Assembly: GCF_039654945.1 (NCBI RefSeq)
Contig: NW_027361827.1
Location: forward strand, 1,550,001 to 1,614,000
Reading direction: 5' to 3'
From: Dendrobates tinctorius
Lineage: Eukaryota
Length of the DNA stretch: 64,000 nucleotides
The notes beneath the pieces are model-generated. The model saw nothing but the letters and a program-made list of their open reading frames with translations. It ran no database searches and was not told where the DNA came from. Made by a program: the position numbers and the translations under genes. Numbering within the stretch: position 1 is the stretch's first letter; the number at the start of each line of letters is the position of its first letter. Positions 12,787 to 61,702 of this stretch are shown one piece after another.

Positions 12787-12938
12787 CATGAAAAATTACC
12801 TCCGACTTCCTGCCCTCTTCTAGTATTTGTCAACCCTAAGAGCGGAGGTCTCAAGGGCCGTGATCTGCTCTGCAGTTTTCGCAAACTGTTGAATCCACAT
12901 CAGGTTTTTGAACTGACAAACGGAGGTCCTCTCCCCGG
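12787..12938 (+). CDS. DGKQ: DGKQ coding exon, start of catalytic domain ([21 protein letters not shown]...GGPLPG)
   Basis: ttttag acceptor, gtatgt donor; DAGKc motif. Confidence 0.97.
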
Positions 12939-13276
12939 GTATGTTGTCTATTTTATATTGAAGGGGTTAAGTAGTGACATTGGCGGCATGTTACAAAGAA
13001 ATGAATTGCCATTTACAAATGGCAGGATAGAGTACAGTCTGCAGGGAATATAGGTTTTGCTTCAACATAAATGTTCCCTTTTCACAAATCTTGTTCACAC
13101 CTTGTGATGCCTTGTAAGTCAGAGCGTTTTCCCCCATTGTAAATGTATGTATAATATAGGAGGAAGAGCCGATCAAGTTCTTTCGGTTTATAATAAAACA
13201 TATGTGTACATTTTTATTTATAGGCTTCATCAAATGCTTACACTAATGCCCAAACTTTGCTGCAACTTTTTCCTTA

Positions 13277-14111: not shown

Positions 14112-14244
14112 NNNNNNNNNNNNNNNNNNNNNNNNNNNNNNNNNNNNNNNNNNNNNNNNNNNNNNNNNNNNNNNNNNNNNNNNNNNNNNNNNNNNNNNNN
14201 NNNNNNNNNNNNNNNNNNNNNNNNNNNNNNNNNNNNNNNNNNNN
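14112..14244. other. Assembly gap (133 N)
   Basis: Run of n. Confidence 0.99.
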
Positions 14245-16561: not shown

Positions 16562-17997
16562 CCCCTTAGTGACCGAGCCAATTTTGACCTTAATGACAAG
16601 GCTACATTTTGCATTTCTGAACAGTGTCACTTTGAGGTTTTTTTTCATGACATATTGTGCTTCATGATAGTAGTAAAATGTATTCGATGTGACTTGTGTT
16701 TAATTGTGAAAAAAAATGGAAATTTGGCGGAAAATTTTAAAATGTCTAAATTTTCAAACTTTTAATTCTACTGCCCTTAAATCGGAGAGATACATCACAC
16801 AAAATAGTTTAAAAATAACATTTCTCACATGTTTACTTTACATCAGCACAATTCTGGAAACATACCGTAATTTAGTTGGAAGTTAGAGGAGTTAAGTTGA
16901 CCAGCGATTTCACATTTTTCCAACAAAATTTACAAAACCATTTTTTTTTAGGGACCACCTCACATTTGATATTAATTTGAAGAGTATGTGTGACAAAAAA
17001 TACCCAAAAGTGGCACCATTCTAAAAACTGCACCCCTGAAGGTGCTCAAAACCACATTCAAGAAGTTTATTAATCCTTCAGGTGCTTCACGAGAGCTAAA
17101 GCAATGTGGAAGAAAAAAATGAATATTTCATTTTTTTCACAAAAAATTACTTCAGACCCAAACTTTTTTATTTTCACAAGGAAAAAAATGGAACCCCAAA
17201 TTTGTTCTGCAATTTCTCCTGAATACGCCATACCTTATTTGTGGGGGAAATCTATTGTTTGGGCGCACGGCAGGGCTCAGAAGGGAAGGGGTGCCATTTG
17301 ACGTCTTGAATGTAAAATTTGCTGGAATAATTAGTGGATGCCATGTTGCATTTGGAGAGCCCCTAATGTGCCTAAACAGTTGAAACCCCCCCACAAGTGA
17401 CTCCATGTTGGAAACCACACCCCACAAAGATTTTATCCAGGGGTATAGTAAGCATTTTGAACCCACAGTCCGTCATATTGAATGTCATCATTATTGTTGA
17501 GCACAAGTACTCGCTACTCCAGTTTGCATAACCCTAAACCTAACTCTAAGCCCAACTGCAAAGAATGGAAAAAATATTTATATATTTTATCATTTTTATC
17601 TAACTAAGGGTGTTTTAATTTGATCACTGTGATAGACCCTATTACAGTGATCAAAGGGAACCAAGAGGAAAAATGTCCTATAGTTGCCAGGTACTGGCCA
17701 GCAGATCTGCGCCCACCATTTTTTTCCAGGAAGGTGACGCCGGGCAGGGGACTGATGAGGAGTGGCCGGGGATGGCGGAGGTTGGGAGGGGCATCATTTC
17801 TTTCTCTTCTGACTTGTATCATGTCAGAGGAGAGAGAAACCATTGCAGCAGCAGGCACACTTTTTATGGTGATCGCCGTTATTCACTGAATAACGGCAAT
17901 CATGTGATCGGACACTGGAAAATCCAACTGTGATCATATTTTTTGGGGCTTCAGCTACCCCTTTGCGGCGGAGTTTTACTCAGCGGTCGCTAAGGGG
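16562..17997. mobile_element. piggyBac-like non-autonomous element
   Basis: TTAA-CCCCTTAG ... CTAAGGGG-TTAA. Confidence 0.85.
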
Positions 17998-18386
17998 TTA
18001 AGTTCTAAAAAAAAAAAAAAAAAAAAAACCATTCCCCAGTGGTGAACAACCCCTTTGGTTATGTGCACACATTTAGCATTTACAGCGGATTTTAACAGGA
18101 AAATACACGATTTTGATGATTTTTTTTTTTCCTTTTTTTTTTATCCAATTTATTTCCATGGTGAAAAAAACTGCAAAAACACTGAGAGTTGACAAGCTTT
18201 GAAGATTCTGATTTGCAAGGAAAAAAATAAGCAGCATGTGCTTGAGTTTCAGAAATCTCATTCACTTTGCAGATGCAGTAAAATTGTTTTTTTTCACAGT
18301 AAAAGTGTAATGTGTGAAGAAGACCTTTAAAGGGTTATTTACACAGGTATAGATGTAGTATTACTAGGATTTGCTTTCAGCTTCAT

Positions 18387-18710
18387 GCTAATTATGCAAA
18401 TTGTCTCTTCAGATCTCACACTTTGCACTGACGAGGGGCAGTATCCTGAAACACAGTGTCTGCAAATTGAGATTCTGGCTTGGCTTTTATCATAAGTCAT
18501 GTGACAAGGCTCGTTAAAGGATCGACATTGACTTTTAGGATTGCTACTTCCAATAGGTGGCACTAGAGTTCTAGTCCTCTTCCTCTCTGAAGAGACAATT
18601 TGCATAATTAGCGTATTTCCCAGAGGAGCATTGCGGCTTTAAGTCTCCTCATCTCGACATGCTTAGCATGTCATTCTCCTCAAGGAGAAATGATACTTCT
18701 TGGATATCTT
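18387..18710 (+). mobile_element. Short hammerhead-containing Penelope- or retrozyme-like unit
   Basis: Hammerhead plus perfect 27-bp inverted repeat (18387-18413 / 18586-18612); outer boundaries approximate. Confidence 0.55.
18413..18473 (+). ncRNA. Minimal type I hammerhead ribozyme motif
   Basis: UUUGCA-CUGACGA-GGGG(cagua)UCCU-GAA-ACACAGUGU-C-UGCAAA: stem I, both core boxes, GUC site (cleavage after 18460), palindromic stem III. Confidence 0.8.
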
Positions 18711-19245
18711 TCAGCTTTATGTAACTGGAGCCATGCTGCAGACTTTGCATAGTTTGTAGCTAGGGAGGGTCGGATAATAACTGAAAGGGACATCATGATA
18801 AACCAGCAGTATGGTCCCTTCAAGCCCATGATCAGTGGGGGGGGTCAATGGAGTCAGACCCTCCCTGAACAAGTCTTGGGATATGCTATCTCTTTCTGTG
18901 ATGCAACCTTTGAGCATAATGTTAGCAGTCTGTTAGTTAAAGCTTTGAAGTCATTGTAGTTTTGATTCCAATAGTGTGAAAATTGTGGTTGTGGAGGGTC
19001 GCCATCACTTAGGTATTGTGAGGCCTCCTAGCAATACACTTAAAAGAAAAGAGGAGCATTATAATGACCAATTACCAGAATTTCAAACAGAAGTAACATG
19101 ATCCAAGGTATTGCACTGTTGAACTATAAATGAGTGAATGAATCTTGATTATATAATTAAATGCTTCAAGAATATTTTGAAAAAGAATACTATGCAGCCT
19201 AATCTTCAGTTTGGATAATGACTAAAGTTGTGCTTACCCTTACAG

Positions 19246-19394
19246 ATTTCATGCATTCTCTCAAGTTCCCTATTTCCGAGTACTTGTCTGTGGTGGTGAT
19301 GGTACAGTTGGATGGGTGCTTGGTGCCCTTGAGGAAATTAGGCACAAGTTAGTTTGTACAGAACCTTCTATAGCTGTCCTTCCTCTTGGAACAG
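19246..19394 (+). CDS. DGKQ: DGKQ coding exon with GGDGT ATP-binding motif
   Basis: [17 protein letters not shown]...AVLPLGT; ttacag acceptor, gtaaat donor. Confidence 0.97.
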
Positions 19395-19500
19395 GTAAAT
19401 GGAAGCATTTTTCAGGACTTTTTTTCTCTAGATAAAATGACCTTTATCACAATGTGCATTTTAATGTACAGTATACTGGCCTTTATTGCAATAACTTATT

Positions 19501-19603
19501 ACATCTGTCTGAGATGGTTTAGTGAATCCTGCATTGAGCAGGGGGTTGGACTCTATGACTCTTGAAATCCCTTACAACTCCAACATTCTATAACTCTATG
19601 ATT
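19501..19603 (+). mobile_element. CR1 3' terminal fragment
   Basis: Matches 16310-16389 (GAATCCTGC.TTGAGCAGGGGGTTGGAC, ATTCTAT tail). Confidence 0.85.
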
Positions 19604-20014
19604 AATGTGTAACTGTATGTGTTCAGACACTGTAAATTTGCAGTACTATAAATAAGGATAGAGTTTTCAAATTTCACTTATTGAAATAGGGTGACACTTC
19701 TGAAAGGTATGTAAAATAGCATTGCAGATATTTTACATTGTAAAATATTGTTTAAGTCAATCATGAACAAACTTTAGTGAAGTTTGTTATACTACTATCA
19801 TTCTTGGAATAAAAACCATGGAAAAGATAAAAAAGTAAAACTGTATTTACAAGGCTTTGTTCACCTATTTCAAATTTGTCATTGTTCAAACTTAGATTAA
19901 TGAAAGTGACAAACACAAATCACTACCGTCAGTTTCCTATTGATAGCAATATCCACAGCATGTACCAGAAAAATAATGATGAATATATTGATGGGACTTG
20001 ATTGCTCCATTGTA

Positions 20015-42552: not shown

Positions 42553-43144
42553 AGGAATTTATCAATGAGATCAATGCTCCTAAGCCAAATTGGTATTTAG
42601 GTCATAAAATATGAGAATCACCGATTTCTAGGTTTCATTTTTATCCAGCTTTCTGATATCTGCAGAAAAATCAATATTTATATGTAAATGAGCTGTTCCA
42701 GACTATGGGCCTGACACGTTTCCGCATGATACTCTGCCTCCAGAGCTTATAATGAAGGGGAAGTTACCAGTGTGATGTGAAATGGCTGATCTCACTGCAG
42801 AGCAGTGTGTGATTATACCTGACACATCTGCATTTTCCTCTCATCTTCAGCTTCCAGCTCATAGGTAGACAGTGTTGCAATACAGCAGAGCTGTGAGAGC
42901 TGCAGCAAATGTGTTTTGTCTTCTTACAAATTCAAATTTACTGCACTGTGTTAGTTCATGTCTCACACTGGTAACACAGCCCTTTCTTAAAAATAAGCAC
43001 TAGAGGTAGATTCTCATGCAGATCAGTGTTTGATCCATATTCTTTAATGGCTAATTTACAAGGTATCATTTTATTCAACTTCCTACGACCTAAATGCCCA
43101 TATATAGATGGCTTACAAGGGTTGATCCTACAAAGAGATTCCCT
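42553..43144. mobile_element. Decayed T2-MITE-like fold-back element
   Basis: TTAA-AGGAAT ... ATTCCCT-TTAA; internal inversion TTACCAGTGTGA / TCACACTGGTAA. Confidence 0.55.
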
Positions 43145-61151: not shown

Positions 61152-61702
61152 CACTGATAAAGAACCACAGAAAACACCACAACCTGGACAATGCTGATGA
61201 GTTTTTATTAAGAAATTACAAATACATTTTCATGTGTCAGTTTGCATTAATTTCTTTGATTGATTACAAAGGTCTACAAAAATCTTTTCAGGTGCCAAGT
61301 GTTCTTGAATGGATGTAGGGTATCTTGATGGGGCTGAATTCAAAAATCCCATTAGTTTTGCTGCATTTGTTCTAGTTTTTTTTTTTATATAATTCCTCCG
61401 TGAAAATAATGCAATCCCCCAATGTGACTTGTGTGTGATAACAATAGCTTTCGGTCTTTTGACTCTTTATCTGCATCTTAGGTAATGAAATATCCCATAT
61501 ATTTATATTGCATTTCAATTTGTAGGCTCACAATGTTGTAAAAGTGACATTTTGAAGCCAGAATTCTGCTGTAATTAATTCTTAAATATCTCAGGAACAA
61601 GAGCCAACCTTGCAAAACTGAAGTCATATTCCTAATCAGCACCATAAACTTAACATAAAACCTTTCAGACCTCGTTGGCACCAAAATCACTGTATACCAG
61701 TG
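61152..61702. mobile_element. Chapaev3-like non-autonomous DNA element
   Basis: TTA-CACTG ... CAGTG-TTA; subterminal GCTGAATTCAAA / TTCCTAATCAGCACC motifs. Confidence 0.45.

What the first reader, a model, noticed from the sequence alone, without database searches (positions are those of the whole stretch)
18413..18473. Core-intact hammerhead ribozyme in sense orientation within a DGKQ intron
Seen: CUGACGA and GAAA cores, a GUC cleavage triplet, a 6-bp stem I extended by AUCUCA/UGAGAU, a 4-bp stem II whose closing pair is G-U rather than the usual G-C, and stem III ACAC-A-GUGU that cannot close as a monomer. Established: minimal hammerheads with palindromic stem III occur in Penelope-like elements, newt satellite 2 and non-LTR retrozymes, and cleave as dimers. 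Inference: the lone copy should be nearly silent in pre-mRNA but could be complemented in trans by transcripts of other family copies, cutting the intron between two catalytic-domain exons. This is the best candidate here for an undescribed system.
Basis: partly seen in the sequence, partly recalled or inferred. Interest (0 to 1): 0.75.

Follow-up and report, generated by a model that had tools for sequence, protein, structure and literature searches.

The report
Worn frog retrozyme hammerhead in intron
The hammerhead ribozyme motif is real, but it belongs to one worn, single-unit copy of a hugely abundant frog jumping repeat (a hammerhead "retrozyme") that landed in a DGKQ intron, so it is an ordinary example of a known kind.

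Summary
The motif is in the sequence as described: a complete type-I hammerhead at 18413-18473 (+), with the predicted cut at 18460/61. It lies in sense in a roughly 6.3-kb intron between two catalytic-domain exons of DGKQ. Rfam Hammerhead_1 aligns over its whole model at 22.1 bits, below the gathering score of 34.

It is not a lone or undescribed system. It sits in a 320-bp insertion (18388-18707) flanked by a 14-bp target duplication. The insertion has a 27-nt inverted piece at its 5' end and about 0.9 of one unit of a tandem family whose unit is about 326 nt.

Contigs from four public runs (at least three frog species labels) pile up over exactly this interval, and tens of thousands of contig pieces match it. 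Most family copies have C at 18444 and 18447, which gives a GGGG/CCCC helix II. This copy has two G-U pairs there, one from CpG decay, and its catalytic fold is predicted to be disfavoured.

This anatomy matches amphibian non-LTR retrozymes moved by Penelope-like elements, which are already described and common in frog introns. The scan has noted the same kind of repeat elsewhere in this genome. Cutting in trans by other copies is untested and looks weak. Interest is low.

The parts
18374..18387 (.). Left target-site duplication, CTTTCAGCTTCATG
   Evidence: Direct repeat D2, 13 of 14 identical to 18708-18721. BLAST extends it to 20 of 24 over 18364-18387 / 18699-18721. It abuts the point where contig depth jumps.
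18387..18413 (-). Arm A: a 27-nt inverted piece, the exact reverse complement of 18586-18612. Its outer end abuts the left duplication.
   Evidence: Inverted repeat I1, 27 nt, 100% complementary. Other family copies do not carry this arm upstream of the hammerhead: loose ends before 18410 read a different, shared family sequence (table 7).
18410..18707 (+). Arm B: the main copy, about 296 nt of a tandem retrozyme unit of about 326 nt. It shares CAGA (18410-18413) with arm A at their junction.
   Evidence: Family contig pieces start at 18408-18413. Tandem joints run from 18707/18708 through about 29 nt to 18412. Depth is 1e5-8e5 here against about 10 in the flanks (tables 2, 5c, 8).
18413..18473 (+). 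Type-I hammerhead motif with extended helix I. The predicted cut is between 18460 and 18461.
   Evidence: Sequence; Rfam RF00163 at 22.1 bits over the full model; motif scan against simulations.
18435..18447 (+). Helix II and loop 2. U at 18444 and 18447 are changes private to this copy, giving two G-U pairs.
   Evidence: Family contigs read C at 18444 (141,348 of 149,098 depth in X1) and C at 18447 (128,473 of 147,428). The proportions are similar in X5, X14 and X15 (table 3). Position 18447 is the C of a CpG.
18586..18612 (+). Source segment of the inverted piece. It lies next to the commonest right-hand end of family copies (18604-18610).
   Evidence: More than 1,000 contigs have loose ends behind 18604-18610, and depth falls about two-fold after 18606 (tables 2, 7).
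18708..18721 (.). Right target-site duplication, CTTTCAGCTTTATG
   Evidence: D2. Depth falls from 1.1e5 to 39 across this point.
12811..12939 (+). Upstream DGKQ exon, start of the catalytic domain (approximate bounds)
   Evidence: ORF 12787-13050 matches DAGK_cat profile positions 1-36.
19246..19396 (+). Downstream DGKQ exon with the GGDGT motif of the catalytic domain (approximate bounds)
   Evidence: ORF 19226-19432 matches DAGK_cat at E 7e-12.

Best explanation
This is one old, non-coding retro-insertion (18388-18707, 320 bp) of a very abundant frog hammerhead repeat, a non-LTR retrozyme or Penelope-derived unit of about 326 nt.

Inferred insertion mechanism: Penelope-like reverse transcriptase/endonuclease machinery copied the repeat's RNA into staggered nicks 14 bp apart. 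The main cDNA (arm B) was primed on one strand. A second, aborted 27-nt cDNA (arm A) was primed on the other strand from near the family's usual 3' end. The two were joined at a 4-nt microhomology.

In the family, the hammerhead is the processing ribozyme. In multimeric transcripts, neighbouring motifs pair through their palindromic helix III and cut out unit-length RNAs (from the literature).

At this locus there is a single motif, now weakened by two C-to-U changes in helix II. As part of the DGKQ pre-mRNA it is most likely inert and leaves with the intron. The sense orientation and the position between catalytic-domain exons are accidents of insertion.
For: Shown here:
- The motif is complete and not a chance match.
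- A 14-bp duplication (13 of 14 identical) flanks exactly the interval where contig depth rises from about 10 to 1e5-8e5 in four runs.
- 20,049 contig pieces from X1 and 17,324 from X5 were laid on the stretch, at identities from under 90% to over 99%.
- Tandem joints run from 18707/8 through about 29 nt to 18412, giving a unit of about 326 nt (table 5c).
- The family majority has C at 18444 and 18447. All variable sites listed inside the hammerhead lie in loops or are G-C/G-U switches (table 3).
- The 27-nt inverted arm is private to this copy.
- The catalytic fold scores -9.9 kcal/mol against an MFE of -14.7, and helix II has a probability of about 0.09.
- In the 241-nt context, a 27-bp hairpin and other pairings dominate (-88.9 kcal/mol, z -7.9).

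From the literature:
- Amphibian retrozyme units are about 330-350 nt. Monomers cleave 6-22% per hour in vitro, and dimers cleave far better (PMC7229834).
- Metazoan type-I hammerheads have a 6-bp helix I, a 4-bp helix II and a short palindromic helix III (PMC4209133).
- A Penelope-like element protein cleaves and extends both DNA strands (PMC11167929).
Against: - All runs were Logan contigs, so depth is not a copy number, and RNA ends at 18460/61 could not be seen.
- No individual family copies could be fetched, so there is no covariation test and no link to a specific autonomous Penelope-like element.
- The main arm ends 96 nt beyond the family's commonest end, so its priming site is atypical.
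- Inertness in vivo is inferred, not measured.
Confidence: 0.87

Rival explanations
1. One reading: the intronic monomer is activated in trans. Transcripts of other family copies pair with its palindromic helix III, form a double hammerhead, and cut the DGKQ pre-mRNA between two catalytic-domain exons.
For: - Helix III is a near-palindrome (ACACAGUGU), and double-hammerhead action is established for amphibian motifs (PMC4209133, PMC7229834).
- The family is very abundant. Pieces of it occur in runs guessed to be RNA (X15) or of unknown kind (X14).
Against: - The helix III self-duplex is only -7.0 kcal/mol. I convert this to a Kd of about 10 uM, which would need millions of partner RNAs per nucleus.
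- This copy's helix II has two G-U pairs, and its catalytic fold is 4.8 kcal/mol above the MFE.
- The 27-bp hairpin and pairing of the helix II strand with the downstream pyrimidine run compete with the catalytic fold.
- No reads begin or end at the site, though contigs could not show this.
- In an anole Penelope-like element, no RNA-seq ends were found at the hammerhead site (PMC11167929).
Confidence: 0.04
2. There is weak self-cleavage in cis. The monomer cuts a small fraction of DGKQ pre-mRNA on its own, as axolotl monomers do in vitro, which slightly lowers DGKQ output.
For: The core is intact. Axolotl monomers cleave 6-22% in one hour in vitro.
Against: - Helix II is weakened and helix III has a probability of about 0.001.
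- Introns last minutes, whereas the in vitro rates are measured per hour.
- The changes in helix II show no sign of selection to keep the motif working.
Confidence: 0.07
3. It is a MITE or foldback DNA transposon with 27-bp terminal inverted repeats that happens to carry a hammerhead.
For: There is a perfect 27-nt inverted repeat with 172 nt between the arms.
Against: - The duplication flanks 18388-18707, not the two repeat arms.
- Other family copies continue upstream of 18410 with a different shared sequence and lack the left arm.
- Depth over the left arm is 10-30 times lower than over the right arm.
- The family occurs as head-to-tail tandems.
Confidence: 0.02

Closest known systems
Amphibian non-LTR retrozymes (newt satellite 2; axolotl Rtz331/Rtz353; Xenopus families)
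   Same: - A non-coding unit of about 326 nt, against 330-350 nt in axolotl and a mean of 316 bp in Amphibia.
- Head-to-tail tandems in other copies.
- A type-I hammerhead with a 6-bp helix I, a 4-bp helix II and a short palindromic helix III that needs a partner.
- Very high copy number.
- A target duplication longer than 4 bp.
- Monomer copies scattered in introns.
   Different: - This locus holds under one unit with a single motif, so no unit-length RNA can be cut out of it.
- Helix II carries two G-U pairs.
- Circular RNA and cleavage are untested for this frog family.
Penelope-like element insertions (pLTR hammerheads, inverted 5'-truncated copy, variable target duplication)
   Same: An inverted piece at the 5' side, a 14-bp duplication, microhomologies at the junctions, and a hammerhead in the mobilised non-coding sequence.
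   Different: There is no RT/GIY-YIG ORF here. The inverted piece is only 27 nt. The main arm ends 96 nt past the family's commonest end, not at a 30-40-bp 'tail'.
Conserved intronic hammerheads of amniotes (Rfam HH9, HH10)
   Same: A type-I hammerhead in sense orientation inside an intron of a protein-coding gene.
   Different: HH9 and HH10 are single-copy, deeply conserved at their orthologous sites and have a stable helix III. This motif is a repeat copy with decay. Only Hammerhead_1 reached E <= 10 in the Rfam search.

Membership tests
Hammerhead ribozyme, type I (Rfam RF00163) | Conserved core: C3 U4 G5 A6 N7 G8 A9, G12 A13 A14, A15.1-U16.1, H17 | tested here: met
   CUGACGA at 18428-34, GAAA at 18448-51, U at 18459, C at 18460
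Hammerhead ribozyme, type I (Rfam RF00163) | Helices I and II flank the core, with helix I open (type I) | tested here: met
   A 6-bp helix I plus a 6-bp extension, and a 4-bp helix II in which 2 of the 4 pairs are G-U
Hammerhead ribozyme, type I (Rfam RF00163) | Covariance-model score at or above Rfam's gathering score (34 bits) | tested here: not met
   22.1 bits, E 0.0011 on 71 nt, whole model aligned. No hit in the wider searches.
Hammerhead ribozyme, type I (Rfam RF00163) | Site-specific self-cleavage after H17 | not testable with these tools
   Only contigs were available, so no RNA ends could be seen
Metazoan non-LTR retrozyme | A non-coding unit of about 170-400 nt carrying a type-I hammerhead, found as head-to-tail tandems | tested here: met
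   This holds for the family: tandem joints give a unit of about 326 nt (table 5c). This locus itself holds about 0.9 unit. The element encodes no family-matched protein; only a chance 54-aa ORF overlaps it.
Metazoan non-LTR retrozyme | High copy number, with the motif conserved across copies | tested here: met
   17,000-20,000 contig pieces per DNA run. The core is invariant at the 10% level, and the helix II majority is GGGG/CCCC.
Metazoan non-LTR retrozyme | Unit-length linear and circular RNAs are expressed | tested here: inconclusive
   Family pieces and one 'goes back 282' joint occur in X15, but X15 is only guessed to be RNA, and contigs cannot show circles
Penelope-like-element-type insertion | A target-site duplication together with an inverted 5' piece | tested here: met
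   14-bp duplication, 13 of 14 identical, and a 27-nt inverted arm
MITE / foldback DNA transposon | Terminal inverted repeats shared by family copies and bounded by the duplication | tested here: not met
   The left arm is absent from other copies, and the duplication lies 95 nt beyond the right arm
Conserved single-copy intronic hammerhead (HH9/HH10 type) | Single-copy, kept at the orthologous site, with a stable helix III | tested here: not met
   It is a multi-copy repeat. Helix III has a probability of about 0.001. Only Hammerhead_1 reached E <= 10.

The most novel reading that the evidence does not exclude
Abundant retrozyme RNAs might pair through helix III with the thousands of monomer hammerhead copies scattered in sense orientation in frog introns. 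If so, they would cut host pre-mRNAs in trans, a genome-wide layer of regulation that depends on the repeat's own RNA. The DGKQ copy would be one such target.
Probability: 0.03. Interest if true: 0.75.

Novelty: already known. Interest (0 to 1): 0.12.

Why it matters
As it stands, this is routine repeat annotation: one more monomer of a hammerhead retrozyme family in a frog intron. Its modest value is as a clean worked example of a Penelope-type two-strand insertion, with a 14-bp duplication, a 27-nt inverted piece and junction microhomologies. It also shows how such motifs decay, here by CpG loss at C11.1. Only if cleavage in trans were demonstrated would intronic copies like this one matter for gene regulation.

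Tried and rejected
- Rfam at gathering score on the whole window and at E <= 10 on 301 nt found no hammerhead. Only the 71-nt search did.
- A self-BLAST of 18300-18800 against the window found no second family copy in the 64 kb.
- The other two core-pattern matches (42821-42850 on the minus strand, 61194-61238 on the plus strand) lack helices I and II and are chance matches.
- The MITE reading was rejected.
- Dimer co-folding of the 61-mer only gave a trivial full-length duplex and was uninformative.
- The search of earlier findings found nothing by place (near) or by sequence.
- No raw-read runs were offered, so cleavage ends, strand and true copy number could not be measured.
- I did not build or fold a family consensus or a 'repaired' hammerhead. 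Majority letters are only reported as the tool listed them.

Full report
**Observation**

The stretch 18413-18473 (+) reads AUCUCA-CAC-UUUGCA-CUGACGA-GGGG-CAGUA-UCCU-GAAA-CAC-A-GUGUC-UGCAAA-U-UGAGAU. It has all the invariant hammerhead core residues. Helix I is 6 bp with a further 6-bp extension beyond a small internal loop. Helix II is 4 bp. Helix III is ACAC/GUGU around a single A.

Helix II has two G-U pairs, not one. Helix III could close as 3 bp plus a triloop, but this costs +1.1 kcal/mol and has a probability of about 0.001.

My scan for the full motif finds this site alone in the window. It finds none in 60 simulated windows at the observed helix lengths, and 0.017 per 64 kb at looser settings.

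Rfam Hammerhead_1 aligns over its whole model at 18422-18466 with 22.1 bits and E 0.0011 when 71 nt are searched. This is below the gathering score of 34. The filters of the wider searches missed it.

**Gene context**

Plus-strand ORFs at 12787-13050 and 19226-19432 match DAGK_cat, and the ORF at 22866-22967 matches DAGK_acc. Two upstream plus-strand ORFs match PF24099, the DGK-theta-specific RBD-like domain, at E 1e-17.

**What surrounds the motif**

A perfect 27-nt inverted repeat (18387-18413 / 18586-18612) abuts the motif. A 14-nt direct repeat, CTTTCAGCTT[C/T]ATG, lies at 18374-18387 and 18708-18721. BLAST extends it to 20 of 24. There is no second copy of the element in the window.

**Family evidence**

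All 24 public runs offered are Logan contigs. Runs from several species labels hold 9-27% of the stretch's sampled words.

I laid four runs at 80% likeness or more on 18250-18850. In every run the summed contig depth is about 10 in the flanks and 1e5-8e5 (X1) between about 18388 and 18711. The edges coincide with the direct repeat. From X1, 20,049 contig pieces were laid, and 17,324 from X5, at identities from under 90% to over 99%. The tool warns that this depth is not a copy number. The count of distinct pieces still shows a very abundant family, shared by organisms A, B and F.

- **Unit length.** Joints in other copies run from 18707/18708 through about 29 further letters to 18412. The family is therefore tandem, with a unit of about 326 nt.
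- **The left arm is private.** Upstream of 18410, other copies carry a shared family sequence rather than the 27-nt arm.
- **Common end of copies.** Many copies end at 18604-18610, and depth rises towards that point, as expected for 5'-truncated retro-copies.
- **Variation inside the hammerhead.** The only sites listed as variable at the 10% level are 18441 and 18442 (loop 2), 18455 (the helix III centre), and 18444 and 18447.
- **Helix II.** At 18444 and 18447 the family majority is C (95% and 87% in X1, similar in the other runs). The family motif therefore has GGGG/CCCC with the canonical G10.1-C11.1 pair. This copy carries two private C-to-U changes, and 18447 is a CpG site.
- **Other private changes.** They lie at 18492, 18521, 18613 and 18680, which puts this copy roughly 2-3% from the family majority.

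**Reading of the anatomy (inference)**

The insertion spans 18388-18707 between 14-bp duplications. Arm B (18410-18707, +) is about 0.9 of a unit. Arm A (18387-18413, -) is an inverted copy of the 27 nt next to the family's commonest 3' end.

The arms overlap in CAGA (18410-13). With the family's A at 18613, arm A would also share ATG with the duplication. The family sequence that follows 18707 shares TCAG with the target.

This pattern matches insertion by a Penelope-like element. The purified anole PLE protein cleaves and extends both strands of its target (PMC11167929). Earlier notes of this scan describe the same kind of insertion elsewhere in this frog genome.

Arm B runs through the cleavage site. 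Its template was therefore an uncleaved multimer or a circle, not a self-cleaved linear monomer.

**Function**

In amphibian retrozymes the hammerhead processes multimeric transcripts into unit-length RNAs. It acts as a double hammerhead: monomers cleave 6-22% per hour in vitro and dimers much better (PMC7229834; PMC4209133).

Here a single motif remains, and several things count against activity.
- The catalytic fold scores -9.9 kcal/mol against an MFE of -14.7 kcal/mol, and helix II has a probability of about 0.09.
- In the 241-nt context, the 27-bp hairpin and pairing of the helix II strand with a downstream pyrimidine run dominate (-88.9 kcal/mol, z -7.9).
- The helix III self-duplex that a trans partner would need is -7.0 kcal/mol. 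I convert this to a Kd of about 10 uM.

It is also untestable with contigs.

**Comparison and novelty**

The unit length, motif architecture, abundance, tandem organisation and insertion scars all match non-LTR retrozymes, the non-autonomous derivatives of Penelope-like elements. In X. tropicalis, 43.9% of such elements overlap introns, and monomers are spread evenly along chromosomes (bioRxiv 10.64898/2026.07.22.740005).

The scan has already noted sense-strand intronic copies in other genes of this genome, RIN2 and BCAT2. The finding is real but ordinary.

The N run at 14112-14244 was not touched.

Noticed in passing
window 18387-18413 / 18586-18612: The perfect 27-bp inverted repeat would form a long double-stranded hairpin in the DGKQ pre-mRNA (241-nt fold -88.9 kcal/mol, z -7.9). 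It is a by-product of the insertion. I speculate it could be a substrate for RNA editing or other dsRNA-binding factors.
   Followed up: partly
window 18453-18462 (tables 7 and 8): Several contigs from X14, X15 and X5 begin to match the family only at 18453-18462, within a few bases of the predicted cut at 18460/61. Such 5'-truncated copies would be expected if self-cleaved RNAs were sometimes reverse-transcribed. There are too few cases, and only contigs, to judge.
   Followed up: no
window 18604-18610: More than 1,000 family contigs stop matching here and continue into unrelated A/T-rich sequence, and depth peaks just before this point. This suggests an even more abundant short form, or a preferred 3' end, of the family.
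   Followed up: partly
window 18313-18386 and 18718-18842: Organism B (run X5) has single contigs about 95-98% identical to both unique flanks. They end at about 18385 and start at about 18718, at the edges of the insertion. No empty-site joint was among those listed. The insertion is probably shared by the two species, but this was not shown.
   Followed up: partly
window 18250-18291: This segment has a contig depth of 365-625 against about 10 next to it, so it is part of another, moderately repeated element.
   Followed up: no
window 17999-18152: An A22 run (18007-18028) and a T-rich run (18116-18143) face each other about 90 nt apart. They are possibly tails of two opposed retro-copies.
   Followed up: no
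window 17619-17655 and 17870-17902: Two short, near-perfect palindromes (17-nt and 16-nt arms, 94% complementary, 3-nt and 1-nt spacers) lie upstream in the same intron.
   Followed up: no
window 14112-14244: A run of 133 N in the same intron. It was left as it is.
   Followed up: no
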